Origin: Selaginella moellendorffii
Taxonomy: Eukaryota > Plantae > Lycopodiophyta
Direction: 5' to 3'
Assembly: GCF_000143415.4 (NCBI RefSeq)
Contig: NW_003314261.1
Span: 248,001-312,000, forward strand
Length of the DNA: 64,000 nt
Part shown: positions 18,490-48,458 of the stretch, piece after piece
How positions within the stretch are numbered: the first letter of the stretch is position 1
How the letters are laid out: each line of letters begins with the position of its first letter
Notes under the pieces: model-generated
What the model was told of the DNA's origin: nothing
The model's input: only the letters and a program-made list of their open reading frames with translations
Databases searched by the model: none
Program-made: the position numbers and the translations under genes

Positions 18490-19827
18490 TCAACCTTTCA
18501 AAGAGTACTTCCTGCCAGTAAAGGCTTGAAACTTTGCTTCCTTGGGAGCTTCTTCTTTCTCCTCACTGGGCTTCTCGGGTGGCTGTCACAAAGAGATAGA
18601 TTACACACCAGGGATGTAACAACAACGAGTGTGGTCTCTACCTTTGGAGTTGCGTCAGCAGCATTTGCCGTTGCTGGCCCAAACACAAGCTTTCCATGCG
18701 GTCTTTGTGCGGGATCCGGAGCAGGAGGAACTACCTTAGGCTTTGGTGCGGAAACAGCCGGAGCCTCTTGTGTGGAAGGCACAGGCCACGCCTTTGGTGC
18801 CTTCCCATCTAGTCTCCTTCCAACACCCGTAAACGCGTTAAACTTGGGCTCCTCGGCCGCCTCAGCTTCTCCGTCAGCTGCTGCACGAATCACACACACT
18901 AGTTGTCTAGACGGTAAAGGCATGGACAGATTTGTCACCTGTGGCGGCCGCAGGCGGCTGCTGTGGTGGCGCCGCCCTCTCTGGCTCTTTGTAGTCGAGT
19001 GGCGGAGCAAAGTCAACCTCGCAGTCCGTTTCGATGATTGAGATTGCTGGTGCAGGCTTGGCTTCCACAATATCAATGTAGTACTTCTTGTTGTTGTACG
19101 CCACCATGATGTTGTCACCCACAGTGAGGCACGAGAAATTCCTCAGCGTGGTTTCTAATCTGCAAAGCAAGAAAAAACGGAATTTGGAGAGCTGTTAGCA
19201 GAGTAAGTACAAGGCTGGTGGCACCTCACTTACACAGCCTTGGGGTTGGAAATGTCAAGAAAGTCCTTGGTGTGAGGCTGCAACTTGACATAGCTGCCCT
19301 TGGGGAGCGTCGCGCTTTTCACTCTCACAAGGTCGCCCTCTTGAAGCAAGAGGTTTTGCATCATCTAGGAAGCGCCGTGTCAGCCACTTGGGGTGAAAAC
19401 GATGCTGGTCTAGCTACACTCACCCAGTAAGGCATGATGATGATTCCTTCGTCGGCCACGAACTCGAGAACTCCGCAGTGTGATGTCCGCGACGTGGCGG
19501 GATTGTGCACCTCAAAGAGCATGGGATAGTCGATCCGTAACGACGCCAGGCGGTCCAGGGCGGACGGAGGCATGATCACTTTGTCGCCGTTCTCCAGATG
19601 AGGCTGGCAAGGAGAAGCGCACGTCGCAAAACCGGGTGGAGCGAGAGAGAGAGAGAGAGAGAGAAGAGTCTCTTACCTTGTCGATGAAGGAGGCGGAATA
19701 GCAGCGATAATTCTGCTCAAACGGCAAGGCCGAGAAATTGATGCCATATCCCCCGAAGTACTGCGGCATCACAAAGCACTGGTTTTCAGCTTGGTGTTGC
19801 TAGCAAAGAAGCCGCCGCGCTCACCAT
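18490..19827 (-). CDS. UFD1: Ubiquitin fusion degradation protein 1, multi-exon
   Basis: [54 protein letters not shown] and [19 protein letters not shown] boxes [14 protein letters not shown] and [13 protein letters not shown]. Confidence 0.93.
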
Positions 19828-19855
19828 GGCTGTGGATCTCTGTTGCTCCGCGCGA

Positions 19856-19863
19856 AAACCCTA
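19856..19863 (-). promoter_or_regulatory. Telo-box upstream of the UFD1 ATG
   Basis: AAACCCTA on + (TAGGGTTT in the gene sense), about 30 bp before the ATG. Confidence 0.5.
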
Positions 19864-20174
19864 AGCCTTGCCCTAATCCGCTGGAATGATGTGGCTTTAA
19901 ATCGCGTTCACGTGGCAGCTCCACCAGCCGCTGGATCTGGAAATTTGGGAATTCCCTGTCTCTCGACACACACACACACACCCACTGCACATGGTTTTTT
20001 TTTCTTCGTCCCCCGGTTGGACCAACTTTGCTTGCAAGCAACTGTTGTCTCCGAGTTTAATCTGCTGTGTCAGAGTAAAAGATTGATATATAATATCATG
20101 TGGTGATCTCGACATGGTACTTCATTCGAATGCCCCGGCCCGCTTGCGAGCGATCATCGCAAGATTTCAAGAGA

Positions 20175-22179
20175 ATGCGGCCCCAAGCCTTCCTCTTGCT
20201 GCTCATGGCCATGGCTGCCGCAGCCTTCTCCGGAGGGAGCAGCGCGAAGACCCTTCACATTGGCTTCCTGTCGTCGGAGCCGGACTGGGCAATTCCGGAA
20301 TCTCTCTCGCTCGAATGGTCGGTATCCGCCTTTAACTTAGATGATATATACAGAGGTAGATGTAATCACAGTCCTCCTCACTCCGCCCATCTGAAACCAA
20401 TAGGCAATCCGCGTTCCAAGTCGCAGTGCAGGTCCTCAACAGCGAGGCCAGGGATTCCGCACTGAGATTGGAGGGCGTTTGGGAGCGGTGTGGGTGCGAC
20501 TGGACATCGGCCCAGAACGCGGCGGCACGGCTGGTTGAGGAATCGCGGAGCAAAGGGGGGCCGGGCGCGCTGCTTGGGGTCGTCGGCCCCGCCTGCAGCC
20601 AAGCAGCCGCTGCAGCAGCCAAGGTGTTGCAAGAGCATCAGATCCCGCTCGTCTCATTTGCGGCCACAGCTGCTCGCCTCTCCAACAGGGACCTATATCC
20701 AAACCTTTTCAGAACAGTGTAAGCACTTCAGAACCCAGTGTGACACCCATTCACGATTGTGCGTGGATCTTCACCTACAGGTACAGTGACGACCATCAAG
20801 CCTCCTCCATCGCCGCAATGGTAACAATCATGCATGCATATGGTGATACGCACTCCATGTAATAAATGGTGGGTGGCAAACAGGTGAACCAGTTGCAAGC
20901 GACAAACGTCACGATCGTCTACACCAACGACGCATACAGCTTGCCCCTGGCCCAACAAATACGCGTAAGTAACGAGTGATTGCAATTTATATTCTTGCAT
21001 GCACAGTCTCTGTGCGACGGAAACGTCTTCAGGATGGAGCTGCTGGAGATGGGAGTGAACGCCACCTTGAACTCGAGGCAAATCGACGGCATGTTCAACG
21101 CGATTGAGCCTTACACCTTCCTCGTCTTGGCACTCCAACCATCGGTAGCCACGCAAATGTGGGAGCTGGTGCTTAAGCTGGTGCGTTTCTGTATAATTAT
21201 GGTTTCCGATGCCAATTACACAAGCCAGAGCAGGGCAAGGCGTCTTATCCTTGGTGGTATTTGGGCAGCGATGGCGTCACCGCAGTGGATATAACACAAG
21301 AAGGTACTAATATACTCTGACTGTACGTACACCAACTGTAGATTGAATCTAATCGAGAATCCCTGCTCAAAGGGAGTGGTCGGCTGGAAGGAGAGATTGG
21401 CATTGCACCATATGGTATGCAGTCAGCGCCATAGCTTTTGCCAAGCATGAATTCATTGAATGCGTTTTGCAGGTGGTGACCCGTCGGACGAGCTAGTGTG
21501 CCAGAAGTTTTACGAGCACTGGAGCGAGCGTCAGCAAGAGTATCCAGGCTTTGCATCGAACCGGAGCACCTCGTACGTGCCTTACTTGATCGACGCGGTC
21601 ACGTCTCTGTTCGAGGCTGCGAATCAAGCATCCGCACAAGGCATTGCAGCGGTAAACGCCAGCAGTGTGCTGGCGGCGCTGAGATCAGGGAGAGCGCACA
21701 AGGGATGCACCGGGAGCGTTGAATTCGATCCCGATACTGGCTCCAGGCTTGTCACGTCGTCTGCGACAGTCTACGAGCTCGTCTCCTACGCTGGCAGCAC
21801 CTGGCAGGCATGGAGGAGCTCTACTAGAGTTTGCCTGATTGCTTCTCTTGTGGTTTTGTGCAGTTGAAAGGAAGGATTGTGAACGGGCGCTTGTCAAGCT
21901 TGCAGCCGGTGACAAGGCCGGGCACGTTTCCAGCCAACAGCAGCGCTGCCGAGGTATGTGTACCCCTCGATCGATATGGAGTGAAAACCTTGTACTCGCT
22001 CCCAGGTGTACTACGTTGGTGGCGAGGACAAAGGCCGCAAGAACAGCAAAGTGAACGCGGCGCTGGTGGCGGCCATTCTAGTCTTGTGCACAGCCTTCAT
22101 CGTCGTCTCGGTGTCGCTCGTGTGCTACCACAAGCTACGTCACAATTCGCCACTCACATTCTTCCGGATGCAGCACTGA
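20175..22179 (+). CDS. Type-I membrane protein: signal peptide, ANF-receptor/LIVBP (Venus-flytrap) ectodomain, one TM helix and a short tail
   Basis: MRPQAFLLLLMAMAAAAFS (signal), LHIGFL, LLGVVGPACSQAA...IPLVSFAATAARLSNRDLYPNLFRTV-YSDDHQA, VTIVYTNDAYS, WWYLGSDG, YLIDAV and KGCTGSVEFD. TM VNAALVAAILVLCTAFIVVSVSLVCY, then tail HKLRHNSPLTFFRMQH*. Confidence 0.8.
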
Positions 22180-22325
22180 CTAGGCTTAGATCGTGTACCG
22201 AAAAATGCAAATGGATCTTGAGTTAAAAATAAAAGTGTTCTCGATTAGGGCACGGAGCTCCAGATCGGAGTTGTAGGGGCCCGGGGGAGCGCAGTCCGCG
22301 TCTAGGGCTGCCAGTGGTGGGAGCG

Positions 22326-24800
22326 ATGAGGATGCATTCCCTGCCGGCGTGGCTGCTGCTGGCGTGCCTGCTGCAGCTCGCCCTAGCTTCCGAATACGAT
22401 CACAAGGTGAAGATTTCTTGCCCATTTCTCTTTCTCGCTTTGCCGGATCGGGGGACTCACGCGTGCTGTGGCGGTGCGTGCTTGCTTGCTTGGGCAGTAC
22501 GACATTGGCGACGCTGTTGTGCTGTGGGTGAACAAGGTCGGCCCCTACAACAATCCCCAGGAGACTTACAACTACTACAGCCTGCCCTTCTGCCAGCCCG
22601 GAAATGCCAATCCCGCACACAAGTGGGGGGGATTGGGAGCGGTGCTGGAAGGGAACGAGCTCATCGACAGCCAGATCGACATCAAGTTCAAGAGTAAGTC
22701 AATGCCTTCGCTCTGCCGGCGCAGGCACTCACAGCGCACATCGTGTTGCAGAGTCTGTTGACAAGGTTACGATATGCAAGCTGGATCTGAATCAGAGAAA
22801 AGCCATGGAATTCAGAGCGGCCATCGAGGAAACATACTGGTTCGAGTTCTTTATGGGTAAGCCATTCTTCCTTTCTTTGAAAACTCTCTAACCGGCGCCT
22901 TTTTTCCAACCAGACGACTTGCCGCTGTGGGGTACGTCTTTCTCCATTTCTCTTTTGCGTCCAGTAGATTCATAGTCCCCGCAGGATTTGTTGGTGAGTA
23001 CCACCACGGCAAGGCGGAGGAGCAGAATGTAGCCATTTACACTCACAAGCACCTCGTTATCAAGTACAACAAAAACCAGGTGCTTACTCTCTTTTCCTCT
23101 CTCTGTGATGCTGATTATGTTTTCCGCTATGTAGATCATCCAAGTCAACCTTACGCAAGATGGTCTGCAGCCACTTTCGCCTGGCAAATCCCTGGAGTTT
23201 ACATACTCCGTGAAATGGATCGAGACAAACACGAGTTTCCACAAGAGATTTGATGCCTACCTGGACTATCCATTCTTTGAGCATCAGGTTTGTTGTCGTC
23301 TGTCTTTGTACAAGTTTAAACTCCTGCTTGTGGTATCTTCGTGCAGATTCACTGGTTTTCGCTCTTCAACTCGTTCATGATGGTCATATTTCTGACTGGC
23401 CTGGTGTCTATGATACTCATGAGAACGCTGAAAAATGACTATGCGAAGTATGCCCGCGAGGAAGATGATCTCGAGACTCTGGTACGTTTATGTTGCGCAT
23501 TGCAGTGGCTGAAAGAACTTTTCCAGGAAAGGGACGTGAGTGAAGAGTCTGGATGGAAGCTTGTCCACGGTGATGTCTTCAGACCGCCACGCTATCTTGT
23601 TTTGCTGTCTTCGCTTGTTGGTACCGGTGCTCAACTGGCTGCGCTAGTCTTTCTGGTGATCTTGCTGGCCATCGTCGGGATGCTTTATGTTGGGTAAGTA
23701 TCTGTCACGCTGCGGCCGAGGTGCTCATCGCTCGCCTCGCCCTTTGTTGATGCAGGCGGGGAGCAATAGTGACAACCTTCATTGTATGCTACGCTCTTAC
23801 GTCATTCATCTCCGGTTATGTTAGTGGCGGGTTTTACTCGCGAAACGATGGTAGGTAATGCTTCTACCTGTGGTGCTAACAATCCCTTACACGCTTTGGA
23901 GCAGGCAAGCACTGGATCAAGTCCATGCTGCTAACGGCCTCGTTGTTTCCTTTCATCTGCTTTGGCATCGGTTTTGTTCTCAACTTTGTCGCAATTTTCT
24001 ATCGCTCGTTGGCCGCCATTCCCTTCGGTACCATGGTACGTTGCAGAGATGATTTTTCTTTTCTCTCCTGAACTTTTATTTTACAGGTCGTTGTTTTTGT
24101 CATCTGGGCATTCATTTCATTTCCCCTGGCTCTTCTTGGGACTGTTGTGGGGCGAAACTGGAACGGGACGCCTGATAACCCCTGCAGGGTGAAGACCATC
24201 CCTCGTCCGATACCGGAGAAGAAATGGTATCTCAAGCCATCCATCGTGGCGCTTATGGGAGGCTTACTCCCATTCGGGAGCATCTTCATAGAGATGTATT
24301 TCGTGTTCACGTCCTTTTGGAACTACAAGGTAACCCGGTCGAGCCCAGTTTTTTCAGTCTGCTGATCTGAGTCCGTGGTGCATGGCAGGTCTACTACGTC
24401 TATGGTTTCATGCTGCTCGTGTTTCTGATCCTCCTCATTGTCACGGTCTGTGTGACCATCGTGGGCACGTACTTCCTGCTAAATGCGGAGAACTACCACT
24501 GGCAATGGACGTCCTTCTTCTCAGCTGCATCCACGGCCGCGTACGTGTACCTCTACTCGGTTTACTACTACTTCATGAAGACCAAGATGTCCGGGTTTTT
24601 CCAAACGAGTTTCTACTTCGGCTACACTCTGATGCTCTGCGTTGGACTGGGGAGCCTCTGTGGTGAGTACCATACACTCCGATTGTTTTCTTGGTCGGAT
24701 GGATTGATGACTTTGATGGTTTTGATGCGCAGGTGCGGTGGGCTACTTGGGCTCGAGCGTGTTTGTTCGGAGGATCTATAGGAACATTAAGTGCGACTAA
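22326..24800 (+). CDS. TMN1: Transmembrane 9 superfamily (EMP70/nonaspanin, TMN1/TM9SF3-like), multi-exon
   Basis: [67 protein letters not shown] and [11 protein letters not shown]-terminal NIKCD* is a KxD Golgi motif. Includes an 18-nt micro-exon at 22914-22931. Confidence 0.95.
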
Positions 24801-39799: not shown

Positions 39800-40634
39800 T
39801 AGGATATTCAAAGTGTGCCACAGGATCTAGCGCATTTTAATCTGCTCCACGAAAGCAGCCACACTCCATCCGAGGTTGCATCGCCTGTTAAGGTAAGGAG
39901 TCCTGTAGCCTAACGTTTCCCTGCCAGGAAGATCATCCTGGCCGAGAATCTTCTAAGCTGCGAGACGGGGAGCCCCAAGATCCTGGCCTTCACAAAAGCC
40001 CCTCGTTGAGCATCCACCACTGTCTCGACACCGAGTTGGACATCTTGCCTTCTTCCAAAAAACCACACCAGGTACATACATTGTCAATCAATTCTGTAGA
40101 GTGTTCTTCCTTGGAACCGTGACACAAGACTCCTGAGAGATGCCCCTGAGAGCGTGGACGACTACTACCTCATACTGGACTGGAGTTGCAACAACACAGT
40201 CGCCGTCGCTCTGGGGCCTGGCGTCTACCTGTGGGACGCCGACACTGGCTAGAGCTTCCAACTTAGCAAATGCGAGGAGCATGACACGGTGACAAGCATT
40301 GCACAGTGGGACTGAGCAGCGCACGCATCCATGCCACCAGCAGTAGCCAGGTTTGTGATCTCAACTTCCTCGTGCAAGCTCTTCTTTCTTGGAACATGTA
40401 GATTCGAACCTTTAGCAGTCACTCATCACGTGTCACGTCTCTGACTTGAAATGGATCATCCAAAAGCTGCGACCACAAGATCATAAACCACGACGGTAAA
40501 ACCTTGGCTTGCTTCCGATGATGGAACGATTAGCTTTGCAAGGCGTCAGTTCTCACGGGACACTGTCAAGAGGCGTGCGGCTTGAAGTGGTCACCATGTG
40601 CAGCGGCAGCAACGATAATCTACTCCATATCTGG
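39800..40634 (+). pseudogene. CDC20: CDC20/FIZZY (APC/C activator) pseudogene, 5' part
   Basis: [61 protein letters not shown] and SGSNDNLLHIW, with stops and deletions. Confidence 0.85.
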
Positions 40635-42333
40635 TGTGAGAGATAGAGATGATGTGGCATTTAATTCAATAAAAAAAATTATCACACAATTATTATTTCT
40701 ATTATTATTCAATAACACCATACTCATACTTGTATGGTGGAGATTTGTAATAGTTGGTGGTGGAGGTGACTCGTATTTGTACTCCTAAAAGGGACATTGA
40801 AGATAAGAGAGAGGTAAATAAGCTATTTGAAGATATTTGACATTATCCAGTAGTGTCCTAGTATGTTTTTTACATTTATTATGGCACATTAATATATGAC
40901 CATATTTTATTATAATAAATAAAGAAGTAAAAATATAGATAATTAAACATTATTTAATTACTCAAGGGTTTGCTATAGAACACCACTCAACACCAAGGTG
41001 TTCCAAATGGTGATTGCAATTTATATCTTAGAAGGCAAATGACTCACAAGATGCTTCAATCTCATAAACCACATAGTACCATTAAGAATATAAAAAGTAA
41101 GTTATTGTGGTCAATGGGCATGCACATGCCCTTTAATAGGGAAGATTTCGTATAGTAATTTTTTGAATGTAATTAGGATGATTAAGTGTTTAGTAGTAGT
41201 AGAAGTGGGAACTTAATAAGTTATGGCTAAAACCACATATTAGTGACAAAATTGAAGTTATAATAATAAGCAAAAATGTGTGTAAGAAAGGATTAAGGAT
41301 TTAAAAGATGAGAGGAAAGGGAAAGGTATGAGAAGGGCCACATTAGTTACATACACACACAATAGGTTAAACTATTTTTCATATCTTTGCATAGGGTATT
41401 CTTTTTGTAAAATGTTTGGTTAAACAAGGCAAGGACATGACAAAGAAAAGAAGATCCAAAAGTTTAAAAATACTAGACTAAAACGAAATAAAATAAGTTG
41501 GAATGCAAAAACAATTATTATATAATATTAATTTTATTACATCTATATACAATTGATGTATAGAAAGTTCTTCTTCATAGTCTGCATATTTCTTCATTAC
41601 TTTTATGGTATTAGAAAATTGACTCCTTGATTTTGGGTGTGAATAATAATAAAAAAAATAAAGGCACAATAATTAATTACTAGTAAGAGAGAGAAAAATT
41701 GAAAATTTATTTTTTACTATTACTTTTAGTACTCTTAGACACTTAATCATCTTTCTTAATTACATAAAAAAATTATTATACAAAATCTTAATATAATTCT
41801 TAATGTAAATTGTTGAAATTGCTTATTGTTACTTGTTGTCAGTGCTTTCTGAATAGCTTAAAACCTAATGTGCTTCATAGTTACTAACTTATTTTTCATC
41901 AAAATAAAAGTTTATTTAAATACCACCCAAATTTAACAACAATACATGTTTAACATTAATTAAGACTTTTTGAACTATTTAGAATCTTTAAAAATTCTAG
42001 AATCAAAGAATAATAATGATAGAAAAAATATTTTTTATCCTTTGCAAAGAAAAATGAGACAAAAGTATCTTTGATGTGTTTTAGTTGGATACAACATAAT
42101 CAACTTGGAAATGTATCAAAAACAAACATTTAATAATGATATTACCGAAGGGAGCAAAGTTTTATCTCAAGTTTTTGAAAATTTTAAACCTTCTTTAGTT
42201 TTAATTAATTTTTTAGATTTAGAGGCATTTTTAGAAGTGATGAAATTAGTAGAAGTCTTTTAAATTTAAAAATATCATTTAAATTTCTGAATTACAAAAT
42301 CAAATATCTAACTAATAAAAATTTATTATGTAC

Positions 42334-42505
42334 TGTGAAGGCCAAGTGTACGGCTACGATGCCGTATACTAATATTAGCGTAGTGAGATTTTGGTAGCCG
42401 TTGAATTGGTTTCAATCCGGACCACTTGCTCCTGTATATAAGCTAGGGTTTTTGGGCTAATTGATATGCACATTTCTGTATCTTTCCATATTCCATGCAC
42501 TCACA
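42334..42505 (+). repeat. 5' LTR (172 bp)
   Basis: Direct repeat of 47147-47321, differing by 9 substitutions and one 3-bp indel. Contains a TATA-like TATATAA. Confidence 0.97.
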
Positions 42506-42506
42506 T

Positions 42507-42524
42507 TGGTGGAGATGAGGGGCA
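42507..42524 (+). promoter_or_regulatory. Primer-binding site, tRNA-Ala type
   Basis: TGGTGGAGATGAGGGGCA versus TGGTGGAGATGCGGGGTA, the complement of the plant cytosolic tRNA-Ala 3' end as I recall it. Confidence 0.75.
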
Positions 42525-42768
42525 CCTTTGATTGTCCCTGAGGAGTGCTTAGATTTGGGATTTCAGTTTAGATCTAACTTTTGCATTATCTAGATCTAGC
42601 TTTATCCATTTCCTTTCTTTTGTTCTTTTCTTTCAGAATTTTGGTTTAGATTTAGCTTTTTGCATTTTCTAGATCTACCATTTCCTTCATTTCTCTTCTT
42701 TTGCTCTTTCTTTTTCATTCGTCTCTATGGCAGATCAGTAATCTCCTCCTTTGACTCTGGAGTAGCAG

Positions 42769-43659
42769 TTGGTACAATTGCTTGATGTTATGCGCTTGCA
42801 ATTGAACAACCAAACTCAGTTGATGGCGGCGTTCACGGCACATGGTACAACTCCTCCTGCTCTTGGTGCCAATCCTCACGTTCGGCCGGAGTTCTTTCGC
42901 GGGAATCCTAGGGATGATGTGTACCATTGGTTTGATCACTTTACGGTGATTGCCACATATCATTCTTGGGATGATGCTCGACGTTTGTGTGAGTTTCCCA
43001 CGTGTCTCCAAGGGACGGCGTTGCAGTGGTACAACGGTTTGGGAGCAGTCACTCGCGGGGATTGGAGTGTTCTTCCGGATGTCTTCAAACGCACCTTCGG
43101 ACATGCCGATGACTATGATGATGCTTTCCAAAAATTGCATCGTCTTCGCCAAGGGCCATCTGAGTCAGTGATGCAATTTGGTGTTCGTTTCCGAAGTCTT
43201 TTGCTTCTTGTAGAGCCAAATATGTCAGAGCAGGTCAAGCTAGGAATGTTGTGGCTAGCACTTCGTCAAGATCTTGTCAGACTTGTGCATGCACTTGCTC
43301 CTGCCACCCTTGATGATGCCCTTCACTTGGCACAATGTTATGAGACATTGCCTTTTCCACTTCTCGCTGCATGCCCTTCAGCTCCACTTCCTGTGGGTGA
43401 TGGTCCTGTTTCAATGGAGGTTGATGCTGCTGCTGCTCGAGTCCAAGGTCAAGGGCGAGGACATGATCGTGGCCGTGATGTTCGCTACTGGGCATGTGAT
43501 GAAGTTGGTTATACTTATCGGCGTTGTCGGCGTTTTCCGGATTGGCGACCTCCATTTCCTGGGTGGAGACCTTGGCATCAACAACGTCCCGTTGGTGCTG
43601 TTGCAATTGAAGGTTTGGACACCGAGATGCATCTGGGAAACGAGGAGTCACGCGAGTAA
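42769..43659 (+). CDS. Retrotransposon gag
   Basis: Open frame with PEFFRG..DDVYHWF, LQGTALQWY, LRQGPSESVMQF and PVSMEVDA. The zinc knuckle is degenerate (YWACDEVGYTYRRC). Confidence 0.85.
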   Translation: MVQLLDVMRLQLNNQTQLMAAFTAHGTTPPALGANPHVRPEFFRGNPRDDVYHWFDHFTVIATYHSWDDARRLCEFPTCLQGTALQWYNGLGAVTRGDWSVLPDVFKRTFGHADDYDDAFQKLHRLRQGPSESVMQFGVRFRSLLLLVEPNMSEQVKLGMLWLALRQDLVRLVHALAPATLDDALHLAQCYETLPFPLLAACPSAPLPVGDGPVSMEVDAAAARVQGQGRGHDRGRDVRYWACDEVGYTYRRCRRFPDWRPPFPGWRPWHQQRPVGAVAIEGLDTEMHLGNEESRE

Positions 43660-46600
43660 CAGAAGGACCTTGCGCGAATAAGTCAGTGACCCCTCCATCT
43701 TTCTTTCGGGAGTATCATCAAGGGGTTCACTTGGCACCAGTTCATCCAGTGTTTACTTTCCAAGCTCGTCTTTATAACAAGAGGTCTCCTATTATTCTCT
43801 CTGTGTTGGTTGATACAGGTTCGAGTTTATCTTCTATTGCTCAACCTGTTGCCACACGTTGTCGTCTACACTTGTGTCGTGCGGCGGAACCAGTTTTCAT
43901 TCTTTATGGCAACGGTTGTACACATGCATGTGCACGGGATGAGGTAGGCCTGGTTGTGCGTGTGGGTGATCTCGAGCTTGAGTTGCAGTCGTTGCGGGTG
44001 GTGCCGAGTCAAGCTTTTGACCTCATTCTTAGTATGGATTAGTTGCAGCGCAATCATGCCAAGTGTGACTTTGAGGCTTCTCCCCCTTGTCTCATACTTC
44101 CTTACGTTTTATCCATTCCTCTCACTTCCATACCTCTTTGTCCCTCTACTTCTACCTCTGCTTCCATTACTTTTGGTTCCCCACTATTTCTTCTTGTGTT
44201 TCTATCTTGTTCTACTCTTCCCTTTTCCGATCCCTCCGACGATCTTTGTGTTGCAGCAGTTGACTGGCTCATGAAGGAGTATTCTGATCTTTTTGACTTT
44301 AACCTATCATCTAGAGCCAAGATTGCCACATGTCATCCGATTCCAACTGGGGATGCTCATCCAATCAAGGTTCTTGTTCATCGTCGGTCACCACAGGAGA
44401 TCAAGATTTTACGTGCAAATGTCCAGGAGATGTTGGAGAAGGGTATTATTCAGAAATCGCGGAGTCCTTGGGCATGTGAACCTCATCTTGTGACGAAGCC
44501 TGATGGGAGCATTCATTTCTGCATCGACTATTGTCCGTTAAACGACATAACGATCTTGGATGTGTACCCTCTTCCTCACACTGCTGATCTCTTGGATCGT
44601 CTGGGGTGAAGTCATTGGTTCACCAAGCTAGATCTTGCTTCTAGGTACCGGCAAGTACTGATGGCCAAAGAAGATATTCCTAAGACTGCTTTTCGTACAC
44701 CATTTGGTTTGTATGAGTTCCTGGTGATGCCATTTGGTTTGAACAATGCTCCAGCAACTTTTTAACGGATGATGGACGAGGTTCTTTGCGATATGCCAGA
44801 GGTGACTGCTGACTTCATTGATGATGTCTTGATCCACTCGGAGGGGATGTGGGAGGAGCACGTTCGTGATGTTTGTAAAGTGTTGGATCAGCTACGCGAT
44901 GTTGGTTTAAAGCTGAAATGGTCGAAGTGTGTGTTTGGATCCAAGGACACAACTTACCTTGGGTACTGTATTTCTCGTGAGGGTTTGCAAGTTGATCATG
45001 ATAAACTTGTGGCTATTTTGAAGTTCCCTATTTCGAAGTGTGTGAATGATGTGCAGTGCTTCTTGGGCAAGGTGCAGTATCTCGGGTGTTTTGTGGATCA
45101 TCTTTCTGATTGCACTGCACCATTGCGAGTATTGCTAAAGTCATCAACGTCATCTTTCATTTGGTCTTTGGATTGTGAGCGGGTGTCCGGGGATCTCAAA
45201 GAGTTATTGACAACTCCTCCGGTTTTGGCATATCCTGACTACACTCAACCTTTTATTTTGCGCGTGGATGCTTTTGACATTGATCTTGGAGGTGTGTTAA
45301 TGCAAGAGAGCTTGAGTGTGCTTGGTCAGTGCCATCCCATTGCATATTTAAGCCGTACATTACAACCAGCAGAGATGAACTACTCCACGACAGAGAAGGA
45401 GTGTTTAGTAGCAGTCTGGGGTTTCGAGAAACTTCATGCATATTTACATGGCTTTCAGACGTTACTTGAAGGTGACCATGCTACTGTTACTTCGTTATTA
45501 AAGTGGAAGAACCTAGTTAGTCGTACTACTTGGTGGGCTTTGAAGCTTCAGATATATGATTTTGATGTTGTTCACCGCCCAGGGAGTTTTATGGCTGATG
45601 CTAATTCCCTTTCTCAAGCTCCTCTTCCTTCTTCACTCTCTTCTTATGTTTCTGACGAGCCTGTCCTTCCAGCATCTGTGGATTTTCTAGACGAGGATTC
45701 AGTGCCGTCGGCGGTTGCTGTACTTGACGTTAAGTGTCCACAAGGTGCAGAGCAAGATCTACCTTCGCATGATGAGGTTCGCGAGGCTCAAAAGATTGAG
45801 CCATAGATTCGAAGGCTTCGAGATGGGTTTGAGGATCCTGCATCACTTGCTGATGACTTGCCTTTCCGGCATTTACATTCTCAATATCATCTTGAAGGTG
45901 GCCTTTTTTATTTTGTGGGGACAGATCCTGATGATCATTTACGGCTGGTGGTGCCTTCTATCTTTATTCCGCGGTTTCTCCATGCCTACCATGATTCTCC
46001 TGTTCTAGGTGGGCATATGAGACATCGTCGTGTAATCGAGAAGCTACATAGGTCTTTCTATTGGCTGGAGGTGTGACGTGATATTATCCGGTATATGTGT
46101 AGCTGCATTTGGTGCCAATCTCGTAATACTCCCCCTCGGGTTGCAGAAGGACGATTGGAGTCAATTGCAATTTCCCGTCCGTTTGAGTTGGTGGCGTTTG
46201 ATTTTATGGGACCTGAATTTATGGGCAATGAGTATGTTATTATTGCTTCTGACTACTTGACTCGTTGGGTGGAAGTTAGTGCTCTTGCTAGTGTCTTTAC
46301 AACTGCTGTTGGATACTTCCTCCTCAATCGAGTGGTGTTCTAACATTCTTGTCCAGAGCGGATTCTTTCGGATAATGGTCCCGCATTTATGGCTGAGGCA
46401 TTTCATGTTTTGATGTCTCGGTTGGGGATTCGCCACACTTTCACAAGTGCTTATCATCCACAATCAGACGGTCTGGTAGAACGGCTCGTTTGGACGTTCA
46501 AGGGGATGATTGCGAAGTATGTGAACTTTCAGCATTCGGATTGGGATAGTTATTTGCCGTCTCTTCGGTATGTATATATCACTGGGGTGTAGAGTTCTGT

Positions 46601-47114
46601 TGGTGCTTCACCATATAAACTCTTATATGGTCATGATCCAATATTACCAACGGAGCTGGGTTTACCTTCGCGATTGCCACGAGCTGCAGATGCTAGGTCA
46701 TGGGATCAATATTTGACAAGCATTCTTCCACTTGTCCGAGCGGAGTCTACCAAACATTTAGGCCACGTACAAGTAGGACAACAATGGCGTTACAACTCCC
46801 ATCATCGTCCACCTGTAGAGTACAAAGTGGATGATTTTGTGTTAGTCCGTTTTCCCCATCTTACGGTACATGGTTTATCTAAGGGGCTCCTTGCACAGTG
46901 GAAAGGACCGTATCAAATATTGCAGCAAGTTGGACCACAAGTTTATGAGGTTCGGCATGACGTCCAGCAAGCCGATCCTCCAAAGATTGTGCATGTGTAG
47001 CGGTTGAAACGCTTCATACAAAGGGATCAGAAGTGGTTAATACCATCTACAGATCTGCCGATGCCTCCTCCTGATGTTCCTCCAGATCCCGGCCCGTCTA
47101 CAAAAGAACTTTGA
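43642..47114 (+). pseudogene. Retrotransposon pol (PR-RT-RH-IN), one reading frame with in-frame stops
   Basis: ORF pieces starting 43686, 44043, 44769, 45858, 46095, 46389 and 46674 are all in the same frame and separated by stop codons. Confidence 0.9.
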
Positions 47115-47146
47115 TGGTCTTCCATTATTCCAAGAGGAGGGGATAA

Positions 47147-47321
47147 TGTGAGGGCCAAGTGTACGGCTACGATGCCGTATATTAATATTAGCGTAGTGGG
47201 ATTTTGGTAGCCGTTAGATTGGTTTCAATCTGGACCACTCGCTCTTGTATATAAACTAGGGTTTTTGGGCTAATTGATATGCACATTTCTGTATTTCCTT
47301 TCCATATTCCATGCACTCACA
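47147..47321 (+). repeat. 3' LTR (175 bp)
   Basis: Preceded by the polypurine tract AAGAGGAGGGGA and followed by the TSD GTAC. Confidence 0.97.
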
Positions 47322-48458
47322 GTACTAAAATTAATTAAATTATTTATTTAATATGAAAAATTTAGTATTTTATTTATTTTATCAAATCAATGTTAGTATC
47401 TAACTGAACATGTAAAATGTATTATATAAATGTTTTTATGATACCTTTATGTTAATTCTTATATTACCTCCATTTTTTTTATAAAAAAATTGAAATATAA
47501 AATGAAATTCACAAACCAAAGTAGCATTTACGAACACAAAATGGACTCAGTTGACTAATGTAAACTACTAGAATTGCAAATTCTCTAGCCTTATATATAA
47601 TTATCAACTTTGTTAGAAAGTGAAACTCATAAACCTTGGAAACACACACAAGATAAATGCATATACACAAAGAGAAAGAACTTTAGATATATTAATTATA
47701 TATAGATGGGTATATAGAATTTTTTGTATTCTTTTCTCATCAACTATCATTTTAAATTAGCTAGACATGATTTAAGCTTAGATTCAGGCTTGGATTAGTT
47801 GCTTGATCGTGAGTGGGAGTTTTAGAGGTAGAGATTATATAACATGTTATTATGCCTATGTGACAGTAATTTCTATATAATCAATCAACTGCCCAAAACT
47901 TAGTTCTTGGTCTTGGCCTTGCTTGCACACATTTTTGCTTATTGTTATGGCTTCAATTTTGCCACTAACACATAGTATTGGCCATGAATTGACAAACTCC
48001 CACTTCTGCTGCTACTAGGCATTTGAATCTTTATAAATATTCTTCCCACTTGCTAAAAATCTCTGCAAAGAATTGTTATGTAATATTTTTAAATCTTGGC
48101 TAATCTAAGTTGTTGAAATCTTTCAATCTCCCATTTGCTTTATGCTCTACTTGCTGCTATTTGTTAGTCAACACCTCTTCACAATCTAGTGCTTTGATGC
48201 AATGCCTCAAACATTTAGTGCATCCAACAAAAGCCTCCAACATTGCAAAAAAAATTTCAATCAAGAGGTTCATCCTCTTCTTCCTCAGTAGCCTCTTGGC
48301 CAACAAATGCCATCCATAGGATCAAAGAGCCAATTGCTCCAATACAATAAAATAAGAACAACAAGAAAGAAGAATTTTGTGTATATCATGTATATAGATG
48401 GGTATATATCCATAAAAACTACTACCATCTAGGCATACTTATATGCCACATCATCTCT

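What the first reader, a model, noticed from the sequence alone, without database searches (positions are those of the whole stretch)
20175..22179. Stand-alone Venus-flytrap (ANF/LIVBP) receptor with one TM helix and a 16-aa tail
Seen: the spliced product has a signal peptide and a complete-looking LIVBP/ANF-receptor fold (GVVGPACS, IPLVSFAATAARLSNRDLYPNLFRTV, YTNDAYS, YLIDAV, GCTGSVEFD). This is followed by ONE TM helix and a short tail ending at 22179, and the next gene starts 147 bp later, leaving no room for a channel, kinase or 7TM part. Known: in land plants this domain normally occurs only as the N-terminus of GLR channels. A VFT + TM + short tail layout is that of the animal natriuretic-peptide clearance receptor NPR-C, and the motifs also recall GABA-B/class C GPCR ectodomains. 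Inference: an undescribed plant cell-surface ligand sensor, decoy or co-receptor (amino acid, GABA or peptide), possibly a non-seed-plant retention or an HGT.
Basis: partly seen in the sequence, partly recalled or inferred. Interest (0 to 1): 0.82.

Follow-up and report, generated by a model that had tools for sequence, protein, structure and literature searches.

The report
Stand-alone membrane-anchored Venus-flytrap receptor gene
This Selaginella gene is real and expressed, and it encodes only a ligand-binding "Venus flytrap" domain, one membrane helix and a 16-residue tail; it belongs to an uncharacterised family kept from conjugating green algae to ferns, not found in seed plants, that keeps the residues animal receptors use to hold an amino acid.

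Summary
A 10-exon gene at 20175-22179 (+) encodes 487 aa: signal peptide, one complete PF01094 Venus-flytrap (VFT) domain (E 2.9e-30), linker, one TM helix and a 16-17-aa tail. Intron-free contigs from 4 runs of 4 studies show all nine splice joints, including the GC-AG intron at 21808-21863. None skips the stop.

The genome is Selaginella moellendorffii. The product equals RefSeq "metabotropic glutamate receptor-like protein E"; two older public models are mis-spliced.

This is not a truncated GLR or an HGT. The same layout occurs in Zygnematophyceae, liverworts, a moss, lycophytes and ferns. The family tree follows the species tree, and dN/dS is about 0.2. No seed-plant member was found.

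The five mGlu1 alpha-amino-acid contact residues are invariant or nearly so, as are a Cys pair and a C-terminal F-x-R-hydrophobic motif.

Best reading: a cell-surface binder of an amino-acid-like ligand that acts through partner proteins. Ligand, location and partner are untested. I found no paper on it.

The scan had already found this on another piece of the same genome (s1-398828), with the same conclusion.

The parts
20175..22179 (+). Whole coding span: 10 exons, 487 aa plus stop
   Evidence: Hand model, identical to P0111 residues 16-502. All nine joints are present in intron-free contigs of 4 runs.
20130..20132 (+). Alternative upstream in-frame ATG used by the RefSeq model; it adds 15 aa before the signal peptide
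   Evidence: P0111 starts MPRPACERSSQDFKR before MRPQ. Three of four contigs begin at 20129-20134 and one at 20066, so use of this ATG is uncertain.
20175..20317 (+). Exon 1
   Evidence: Joint 20316>20403, cut +1, GT..AG
20404..20718 (+). Exon 2, carrying the Cys pair, GPACS and SFAAT
   Evidence: PF01094 E 8.7e-14 on this exon alone; joints
20781..20820 (+). Exon 3 (40 nt)
   Evidence: Joints
20884..20964 (+). Exon 4
   Evidence: Joints
21007..21180 (+). Exon 5
   Evidence: Joints
21234..21303 (+). Exon 6, carrying YPWWYLGSDG
   Evidence: Joints
21373..21414 (+). Exon 7 (42 nt; missing from the old model EFJ15097)
   Evidence: Joints; comparison with P0001
21473..21807 (+). Exon 8
   Evidence: PF01094 model positions 250-337; joints
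21808..21863 (+). Intron 8, GC-AG
   Evidence: Joint 21803>21860 skips 56 nt and can shift by 4. Only the +4 placement gives a known splice pair, GC..AG.
21864..21953 (+). Exon 9
   Evidence: Joints
22006..22179 (+). Exon 10: linker end, TM helix, tail and stop
   Evidence: Joint; contigs run through the stop to 22182-22240
20175..20246 (+). Signal peptide, aa 1-24 or so; cleavage predicted after the small residues SSA
   Evidence: Charged start, 14-residue hydrophobic core and small residues at -3/-1, read from the sequence. Every orthologue has an N-terminal hydrophobic leader. No SignalP run was possible.
20247..21920 (+). Venus-flytrap domain, aa 25-419 (with introns). Includes C79/C112 and S113, T136, D156, Y184, D264
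   Evidence: Pfam. AF2 mean pLDDT 85.5, mostly above 90 here. VIA-align Z 35-38 to mGluR, LIVBP and GLR3.4 ATD structures. Residue mapping.
21921..22056 (+). Low-confidence linker, aa 420-447, with one N-x-S sequon
   Evidence: pLDDT below 50. Length varies among orthologues, and the linker is Ser/Thr/Pro-rich in the algae.
22057..22125 (+). Transmembrane helix, aa 448-470, starting with a small-xxx-small motif (A-L-V-A-A)
   Evidence: Hydropathy up to 2.87; AF2 helix. Orthologues mostly have G-x-I-A-G here.
22126..22176 (+). Cytosolic tail, 16-17 aa, with basic residues and then F-F-R-M near the C-terminus
   Evidence: An [FY]-x-R-[MILVT] motif lies in the last 9 residues of 21 of 28 TM-bearing members, and near variants occur in others.

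Best explanation
The gene is intact, expressed and single-copy per haplotype in Selaginella moellendorffii. It encodes a type I membrane protein: a cleavable signal peptide, one complete Venus-flytrap (type I periplasmic-binding-protein fold) ectodomain, a flexible linker, one TM helix and a 16-17-residue cytosolic tail. It is the lycophyte member of an old, vertically inherited family present in Zygnematophyceae, liverworts, mosses, lycophytes and ferns. No seed-plant member was found.

Most likely mechanism (inferred): the flytrap faces the apoplast and closes on a small alpha-amino-acid-like ligand, held by the same Ser/Thr/Asp/Tyr/Asp set that mGlu receptors use. The protein has no catalytic or pore-forming part, so its output must go through other proteins. 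The candidates for that contact are the flytrap itself, as a homo- or heterodimer; the small-xxx-small TM helix; and the conserved C-terminal F-x-R-hydrophobic motif, which may instead be a trafficking signal.

Shown here: gene structure, expression, architecture, family, conservation and purifying selection. Inferred: topology and location, ligand class, dimerisation and partner.
For: - Gene and expression: nine joints in intron-free contigs from 4 studies. Variants matching the other haplotype's protein model appear in the contigs, which suggests both alleles are expressed.
- Architecture: only PF01094, at E 2.9e-30. AF2 pLDDT is 85.5 with a C-terminal TM helix. Z is 35-38 to amino-acid-bound mGluR, T1R and LIVBP structures and to the AtGLR3.4 ATD.
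- Family: 25 or more full-length proteins of 480-590 aa with the same layout score 540 bits or more against the family HMM. The best single domain of anything else scores 189 bits or less.
- Named sources: Mesotaenium, Spirogloea, Closterium, Netrium, Marchantia, Riccia, Calypogeia, Physcomitrium, Diphasiastrum, Pteridium, Psilotum, Ceratopteris and Adiantum.
- Descent: the embryophyte clade has 100/100 support, with liverwort, moss and fern subclades.
- Selection: dN/dS is 0.19-0.23 in fern-fern and moss-moss pairs. The Selaginella protein keeps all 33 invariant columns and 73 of the 83 columns that are at least 80% conserved, within the family range of 71-83.
- Ligand site: P0111 S128, T151, D171, Y199 and D279 align with mGlu2/mGlu7 Ser, Thr, Asp, Tyr and Asp. 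These correspond to mGlu1 S165, T188, D208, Y236 and D318, the residues that bind the alpha-amino-acid function (PMC2680970). Four are invariant in 29 sequences and the Ser is at least 90% conserved, with Thr in one member.
- Disulfide candidates: the invariant Cys pair C94/C127 aligns with Cys in a GABA-B2-like VFT.
- TM and tail motifs.
Against: - No binding, localisation or genetic data exist.
- The AtGLR3.4 ATD also keeps 4 of the 5 motif residues (Tyr replaced by Cys). From memory, that ATD is not known to bind amino acids, so the motif is suggestive only.
- The Selaginella branch is long (0.82). Its tail motif (FFRMQH) and TM motif (AxxxA) are diverged versions of the consensus.
- Two Closterium paralogues lack a TM helix, so membrane anchoring is not universal.
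- Absence from seed plants rests on database searches, not on genome tblastn.
Confidence: 0.5

Rival explanations
1. A membrane-tethered binding protein that serves another membrane protein. It would capture an amino acid or similar solute and hand it to, or gate, a transporter or a GLR channel, acting as an auxiliary subunit. This resembles the anchored solute-binding proteins of Gram-positive bacteria and archaea.
For: The fold and the closed model match amino-acid-bound ABC solute-binding proteins as well as they match receptors (Z 37). The best profile hit among solved structures is the ATD of the plant channel AtGLR3.4, over the whole domain (E 3.5e-27). The protein has no signalling domain of its own. 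A small-xxx-small TM motif suits helix-helix packing with a partner.
Against: No partner is identified, and no conserved gene neighbourhood was examined. The neighbours here are UFD1 and TM9SF. From memory, eukaryotic amino-acid transporters are not known to use binding proteins. This overlaps with the best explanation, differing only in the kind of partner.
Confidence: 0.2
2. A decoy, clearance or sorting receptor. It would bind ligand and cycle through the endomembrane system without signalling, as proposed for NPR-C, or like type I cargo receptors with short tails. The conserved tail would be purely a trafficking signal.
For: The layout is that of NPR-C and of cargo receptors. The tail is short (13-25 aa in most members), with a juxtamembrane basic cluster and a conserved hydrophobic C-terminal motif. 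From memory, that is the general form of COPII/COPI or adaptor signals.
Against: NPR family structures are not among the 60 best profile hits or the 50 rows listed for each fold search. The F-x-R-hydrophobic motif matches no sorting signal that I could verify. A decoy presupposes a signalling receptor for the same ligand, and none is known.
Confidence: 0.15
3. A recently truncated or decaying GLR or class C receptor copy, or a mis-modelled gene that continues into channel or 7TM exons.
For: The best solved-structure profile hit is a GLR ATD. One contig (X5) runs on into the next gene.
Against: The same layout occurs in orthologues from algae to ferns. dN/dS is about 0.2. All invariant residues are kept. 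No joint skips the stop, and the downstream gene is an EMP70/TM9SF protein with its own start and signal peptide.
Confidence: 0.02
4. Horizontal transfer of a bacterial LIVBP-type or animal VFT gene into Selaginella.
For: The domain family is abundant in bacteria. The nearest non-family relatives by profile are cnidarian multi-VFT proteins.
Against: The gene has nine spliceosomal introns. The family tree is congruent with the species tree from Zygnematophyceae to ferns. Bacterial hits score 65 bits or less and cnidarian domains 189 bits or less, against 540 or more within the family.
Confidence: 0.02

Closest known systems
Amino-terminal domain of plant glutamate receptor-like channels (AtGLR3.4, PDB 7lzh)
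   Same: Best profile hit among solved structures, aligned over the whole flytrap (E 3.5e-27). VIA-align Z 36.5 over 368 residues. Shares the Ser, Thr and two Asp of the amino-acid motif.
   Different: GLRs continue into an S1-S2 ligand-binding domain and a pore, and this protein stops after one TM helix. GLR3.4 has Cys where this family has the invariant Tyr. Identity is only about 19%. I could not build a joint tree because no GLR sequences were retrievable.
Class C GPCR flytraps (mGlu1-8, CaSR, T1R, GABA-B)
   Same: Top Foldseek and VIA-align hits. All five mGlu1 alpha-amino-acid contact residues are conserved. The Cys pair is shared with a GABA-B2-like protein. RefSeq names the gene 'metabotropic glutamate receptor-like protein E'.
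   Different: No cysteine-rich domain and no 7tm_3 domain. Identity is 17-21%.
Natriuretic peptide clearance receptor NPR-C
   Same: Same overall layout: signal peptide, one flytrap, one TM helix and a short cytosolic tail without an enzyme domain.
   Different: No specific sequence or structural affinity was seen: NPR structures are absent from the 60 best profile hits and from the 50 rows listed for each fold search. From memory, NPR-C binds peptides across a dimer and lacks the amino-acid motif. The tail here is 16 aa, against 37 aa as I recall for NPR-C, and carries a different motif.
Venus kinase receptors of invertebrates (PMC2680970)
   Same: A flytrap joined to a single TM helix. The same paper reports VKR activation by amino acids and analyses the same 5-residue motif.
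   Different: VKRs carry an intracellular tyrosine kinase, and this family has only a 13-25-aa tail.
Bacterial and archaeal LIVBP-type solute-binding proteins
   Same: Same fold, with Z 36-37.6 to Leu-, Ala- and Ile-bound proteins. PF13458 also matches.
   Different: Those are periplasmic, lipid-anchored or TM-anchored partners of ABC importers. Sequence scores are 65 bits or less. The gene here is eukaryotic, with nine introns.
Uncharacterised cnidarian triple-flytrap single-pass proteins (Pocillopora verrucosa LOC131795997, P0142)
   Same: The nearest non-family relative by profile. Its last flytrap, linker and TM align over family HMM positions 32-497 at 189 bits, with a similar G-G-I-I-A-L-G start to the TM helix.
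   Different: Three flytraps instead of one. About 25% identity. It lacks the GPACS Cys-Ser. Its tail is about 55 aa.

Membership tests
Pfam PF01094 ANF_receptor / type I periplasmic-binding-protein (Venus flytrap) fold | Significant match to the family HMM over the whole domain | tested here: met
   E 2.9e-30, 105.9 bits (cutoff 25.4), model positions 2-337 of 353
Pfam PF01094 ANF_receptor / type I periplasmic-binding-protein (Venus flytrap) fold | Bilobed alpha/beta fold superposable on solved flytraps | tested here: met
   AF2 pLDDT 85.5; VIA-align Z 35-38, rmsd 2.3-3.1 A over 336-381 residues
Streptophyte stand-alone flytrap family (unnamed; Marchantia Mp1g13780, Physcomitrium XP_024381514 and others) | Signal peptide + single flytrap + one TM + short tail, with the GPACS, SFAAT, FRT..D..Q, YPWWY.G.DG and GCTG motifs | tested here: met
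   All 33 invariant columns kept; 548 bits against the family HMM; placed inside the embryophyte clade at 100/100
Streptophyte stand-alone flytrap family (unnamed; Marchantia Mp1g13780, Physcomitrium XP_024381514 and others) | C-terminal [FY]-x-R-[MILVT] motif and a small-xxx-small start to the TM helix | tested here: met
   FFRM and A-L-V-A-A in Selaginella, which are diverged forms of the FVRM(L) and G-x-I-A-G consensus
Plant GLR / ionotropic glutamate receptor channels | S1-S2 ligand-binding domain (PF10613/PF00497) and pore domain (PF00060) after the ATD | tested here: not met
   No such Pfam match. The transcript ends after the stop at 22179 and no joint leads to further exons.
Class C GPCRs (mGluR, CaSR, T1R, GABA-B) | 7tm_3 heptahelical domain (PF00003) | tested here: not met
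   Only one hydrophobic helix; no PF00003 match
Class C GPCRs (mGluR, CaSR, T1R, GABA-B) | Five-residue alpha-amino-acid contact set (mGlu1 S165, T188, D208, Y236, D318) | tested here: met
   Aligned to P0111 S128, T151, D171, Y199 and D279 in HMMER alignments to mGlu2 and mGlu7. Motif definition from PMC2680970. The mGlu1 to mGlu2/7 residue equivalence is from my own knowledge.
Natriuretic peptide receptor C | Flytrap + one TM + short non-catalytic tail | tested here: met
Natriuretic peptide receptor C | Specific sequence or structural kinship with NPR ectodomains, and peptide binding at a dimer interface | tested here: not met
   No NPR among the 60 best profile hits or the 50 listed Foldseek and VIA-align rows. 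Peptide binding is not testable here.
Venus kinase receptors | Intracellular tyrosine kinase domain | tested here: not met
   The tail is 16-17 aa

The most novel reading that the evidence does not exclude
This family is a true ligand-sensing cell-surface receptor system of streptophytes. It would be a non-channel, non-GPCR, non-kinase Venus-flytrap receptor for an amino acid or related metabolite that signals through an unknown partner. It would have arisen before plants colonised land and been lost in the seed-plant lineage. That would make it a receptor class with no Arabidopsis counterpart, which would explain why it has gone unnoticed.
Probability: 0.35. Interest if true: 0.85.

Novelty: new variant of a known kind. 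Interest (0 to 1): 0.66.

Why it matters
In plants, extracellular amino-acid sensing is attributed mainly to GLR channels, and the models come from seed plants.

This family has several features that make it worth testing:
- It is conserved and under purifying selection.
- It is single-copy in most land plants sampled.
- It keeps the full amino-acid contact set of animal mGlu receptors.
- It has no output domain of its own.
- It occurs in the lineages that bracket the move to land (Zygnematophyceae, bryophytes, lycophytes, ferns), and no seed-plant member was found.

If it is a sensor or co-receptor, it adds a new receptor architecture to plant signalling. It would also show a signalling component lost on the way to seed plants.

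The question is directly testable, because Marchantia and Physcomitrium each have one copy and efficient knockout methods. More practically, two of the three public Selaginella models of this gene are mis-spliced. The RNA-supported structure given here matches the RefSeq model.

Tried and rejected
- **Naive intron 1 donor at 20322.** It breaks the frame. The donor at 20318 is correct and RNA-supported.
- **Alternative GT donor at 21781 for intron 8.** Rejected, because the contigs show the 56-nt GC-AG intron.
- **Intron-8 retention.** It would end the protein in a short hydrophobic peptide. It is not seen in the contigs, but contigs drop rare forms.
- **Fetching the other haplotype's locus for an allelic dN/dS.** P0001 is not on record. 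I used the variants seen in RNA contigs instead: 4 synonymous, and 2 non-synonymous in the linker and TM.
- **A joint tree with GLR ATDs, mGluR, GABA-B, NPR and LIVBP.** Not possible. The word-index searches returned no GLRs, PDB sequences are not retrievable as files, and I did not type sequences from memory. The outgroups used were two tandem-VFT 7TM proteins, one class C GPCR and one bacterial binding protein, all on very long branches.
- **Fold ranking.** It cannot say which flytrap class is nearest. All the best rows are tied at Z 35-38.
- **ESM Atlas searches.** These confirmed only the domain family.
- **Literature.** Searches by gene identifiers and by domain plus taxon terms found nothing on this family. 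A GLR review does not mention it. Supplementary tables and subscription journals were not covered.
- **Organism names.** Several Logan and EukProt members could not be named. They are placed only by the tree.
Full report
**1. Observation**

The region 20175-22179 on the + strand holds a 10-exon gene. I rebuilt the exon chain by hand from the three-frame translation.
- Exons: 20175-20317, 20404-20718, 20781-20820, 20884-20964, 21007-21180, 21234-21303, 21373-21414, 21473-21807, 21864-21953 and 22006-22179.
- Introns are 42-86 nt. Eight are GT-AG and one is GC-AG (21808-21863).

Sequencing runs holding 50-60% of the sampled words of the locus were found in seven studies. That is about the exon share of the stretch. 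I laid contigs from four runs of four studies on 19800-23300.
- All nine joints are present in all four runs. One is a 56-nt skip whose only sensible placement is GC..AG at 21808-21863.
- The runs are only guessed to be RNA, but contigs lacking nine introns cannot be genomic DNA. The gene is therefore transcribed and spliced as modelled.
- Contigs cover 20066/20131 to 22182-22240 and run through the TGA at 22177-22179.
- No joint leaves exon 9 or 10 for other exons.
- One contig (X5) continues unspliced into the next gene. The tool warns that a contig across two genes shows no single transcript. Either way the stop would end translation.

**2. Identity of the gene**

An exhaustive HMMER search with exon 2, followed by look-ups, shows that the genome is Selaginella moellendorffii.
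- My model equals residues 16-502 of the RefSeq protein named "metabotropic glutamate receptor-like protein E" (P0111). P0111 starts at an upstream in-frame ATG at 20130.
- Two older models, SELMODRAFT_423282 (the other haplotype) and SELMODRAFT_450418, are mis-spliced relative to the RNA. They have wrong intron 1 boundaries, a wrong or missing exon 6 or 7, and a partly retained intron 8.
- Variants seen in the contigs match the other haplotype's protein, which suggests both alleles are expressed. Of six coding variants, four are synonymous and two are conservative changes in the linker and TM.

**3. Architecture**

- The whole protein matches only PF01094 ANF_receptor (E 2.9e-30, model positions 2-337 of 353) and the overlapping PF13458.
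- The N-terminus from 20175 has the form of a signal peptide.
- There is one strongly hydrophobic segment (aa 448-470), followed by a 16-17-aa tail.
- AlphaFold2 with a 29-sequence family alignment gives mean pLDDT 85.5. It shows a confident bilobed domain, a disordered linker and a C-terminal helix.
- Foldseek and VIA-align place the domain with mGlu, CaSR and T1R flytraps, the AtGLR3.4 ATD and amino-acid-bound bacterial binding proteins. All are tied at Z 35-38.
- The flanking genes are UFD1 on the minus strand and an EMP70/TM9SF gene whose ATG is at 22326.
- There is no room for further domains, and none is present.

**4. A conserved family, not a one-off**

The searches recover proteins of 480-590 aa with the same layout.

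| Group | Named sources |
|---|---|
| Zygnematophyceae | Mesotaenium, Spirogloea (3 copies), Closterium (several paralogues), Netrium |
| Liverworts | Marchantia polymorpha Mp1g13780, M. paleacea, two Riccia species, Calypogeia |
| Moss | Physcomitrium patens |
| Lycophytes | Selaginella, Diphasiastrum |
| Ferns | Pteridium, Psilotum, Ceratopteris, Adiantum |

- Family members score 540 bits or more against the family HMM. The best single domain of any other protein recovered scores 189 bits.
- A maximum-likelihood tree gives an embryophyte clade at 100/100, with liverwort, moss and fern subclades. The algal sequences lie outside it. [quoted passage not shown]
- Unnamed Logan sequences fall inside the fern, moss, liverwort or algal clades.
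- No seed-plant protein appeared in any search, although seed plants dominate plant protein databases. This is good evidence of loss but not proof.
- No named hornwort or earlier-branching streptophyte alga appeared either.

**5. Selection**

- Transcript-derived coding sequences give dN/dS of 0.23 (two ferns, dS about 1.0) and 0.19 (two mosses, dS about 1.1). Comparisons with Selaginella are saturated at synonymous sites.
- The Selaginella protein keeps all 33 invariant columns. It also keeps 73 of the 83 columns that are at least 80% conserved, within the range of other members (71-83).
- This rules out a decaying or recently truncated copy.

**6. Clues to mechanism**

(a) Ligand site.
- HMMER alignments to mGlu2 and mGlu7 place family residues S128, T151, D171, Y199 and D279 (P0111 numbering) on the Ser, Thr, Asp, Tyr and Asp of the mGlu binding site. 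In the numbering from the 20175 start they are S113, T136, D156, Y184 and D264.
- In mGlu1 those residues are S165, T188, D208, Y236 and D318. They bind the carboxylate and amine of the ligand's alpha-amino-acid function (PMC2680970, citing Acher and Bertrand 2005).
- Four are invariant in 29 sequences. The Ser is at least 90% conserved, with Thr in one member.
- Caveat: the AtGLR3.4 ATD keeps four of the five, with Cys in place of Tyr. The motif is therefore suggestive, not decisive.

(b) Cys pair. The invariant pair C94/C127, in the motif GPACS, aligns with two Cys of a GABA-B2-like flytrap. It is probably a lobe-1 disulfide, which fits a secretory-pathway protein. So do the five N-x-S/T sequons.

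(c) TM helix. In most members it begins with G-x-I-A-G, a GxxxG motif. Selaginella has A-L-V-A-A. Such motifs commonly mediate helix packing; that is general knowledge, not tested here.

(d) Tail.
- Tails are 13-25 aa in most members, with a juxtamembrane basic cluster.
- An [FY]-x-R-[MILVT] motif lies within the last nine residues in 21 of 28 TM-bearing members. The consensus is Q-F-V-R-M-L in the algae, and Selaginella has F-F-R-M-Q-H.
- A motif kept this long in a 16-aa tail implies a cytosolic binding partner. That partner could be trafficking machinery or a signalling protein.

**7. Best explanation and rivals**

The most likely reading is a type I cell-surface protein whose flytrap binds an amino-acid-like small ligand and which acts through partner proteins, as a co-receptor or sensor subunit. 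My estimates for each step are:

| Step | Probability |
|---|---|
| Architecture, expression and family | about 0.95 |
| Ligand is amino-acid-like | about 0.55 |
| Output goes through a partner, not pure buffering or clearance | about 0.5-0.6 |

The live rivals are a tethered binding protein serving a transporter or GLR channel, and a decoy or sorting receptor whose tail is only a trafficking signal. A truncated GLR, a pseudogene, a model artefact and HGT are all contradicted by the data above.

**8. Comparison with known systems**

- The layout is that of NPR-C, but there is no specific kinship to NPRs.
- The domain is about equally distant from the plant GLR ATD (best profile hit, 3.5e-27, full length) and from class C GPCR flytraps (best fold and single-sequence hits).
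- It shares the amino-acid motif with class C GPCRs.
- It lacks the defining output modules of GLRs, class C GPCRs and Venus kinase receptors. It should not be filed under any of them.
- The automated name "metabotropic glutamate receptor-like" overstates what is known.
- The nearest non-family relatives by profile are uncharacterised cnidarian proteins with three flytraps, one TM and a short tail. This hints that the flytrap-TM module may be older than streptophytes.

**9. Novelty and earlier work**

- Gene models exist in RefSeq, GenBank and UniProt.
- Searches of 8.4 million papers by gene identifiers and by domain plus taxon terms found nothing on the family.
- The scan's own index shows that the same gene family was already noted on another piece of this genome, presumably the other haplotype. 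A follow-up agent reached the same conclusion (s1-398828).
- That note is not independent evidence. My tests were run afresh and agree with it.
- I rate this a new variant of a known kind: a Venus-flytrap receptor-like protein with a single TM helix and no output domain, as a conserved streptophyte family.

Noticed in passing
window 22914-22931 (within the TM9SF/EMP70 gene that starts at 22326): The downstream gene appears to have an 18-nt micro-exon. All four runs join 22856 to 22984 with 17 extra letters that match 22914-22930 apart from one G>A difference. The boundaries give AG/GT sites and keep the frame, reading D-D-L-P-L-W.
   Followed up: partly
window 22180-22330: The gap between the 3' ends of the flytrap transcripts (22182-22240) and the 5' end of TM9SF contigs (22252) is only tens of bases. 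One high-depth contig (X5) spans both genes unspliced. This could be read-through, overlapping UTRs or an assembly merge.
   Followed up: no
window 18907-19772, minus strand: A UFD1 gene (PF03152 E 1.8e-21; PF24842 E 1.2e-23) is transcribed divergently from the flytrap gene. The roughly 400-nt shared upstream region holds a (GA)n run at about 19645-19665 and a (CA)n run at about 19966-19982.
   Followed up: partly
public protein models P0001 (EFJ15097, SELMODRAFT_423282) and P0112 (SELMODRAFT_450418): Both older models of this gene are mis-spliced relative to the RNA contigs: wrong intron 1 boundaries, a wrong or missing exon 6 or 7, and a partly retained intron 8. Only the RefSeq model P0111 matches.
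   Followed up: yes
P0006 / P0142 / P0143 (Pocillopora verrucosa LOC131795997, about 1,390 aa): These uncharacterised coral proteins have a signal peptide, three flytraps, one TM helix and a tail of about 55 aa. They are the nearest non-family relatives (189 bits for the last flytrap plus TM). The start of their TM helix is similar, and the tail holds a Q-V-F-R-Q stretch that recalls the plant Q-F-V-R-M motif.
   Followed up: partly
Closterium proteins P0126, P0127, P0116, P0103, P0181, P0029: Closterium has several paralogues of the family. Two have no TM helix and may be secreted forms or truncated models. Several long models (851-1,348 aa, one with an OTU domain) look like fused neighbouring genes.
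   Followed up: no
P0002, P0003 ('CASR protein, partial', Polypterus senegalus; 3,171 and 2,496 aa): These giant proteins have 6-7 flytrap stretches and came up as strong exon-2 hits. They are probably tandem receptor genes fused by annotation.
   Followed up: no
window 40001-48000: This block is markedly AT-richer (GC 0.35-0.45) than the rest of the window (0.50-0.60). It may be repeat or transposon sequence.
   Followed up: no
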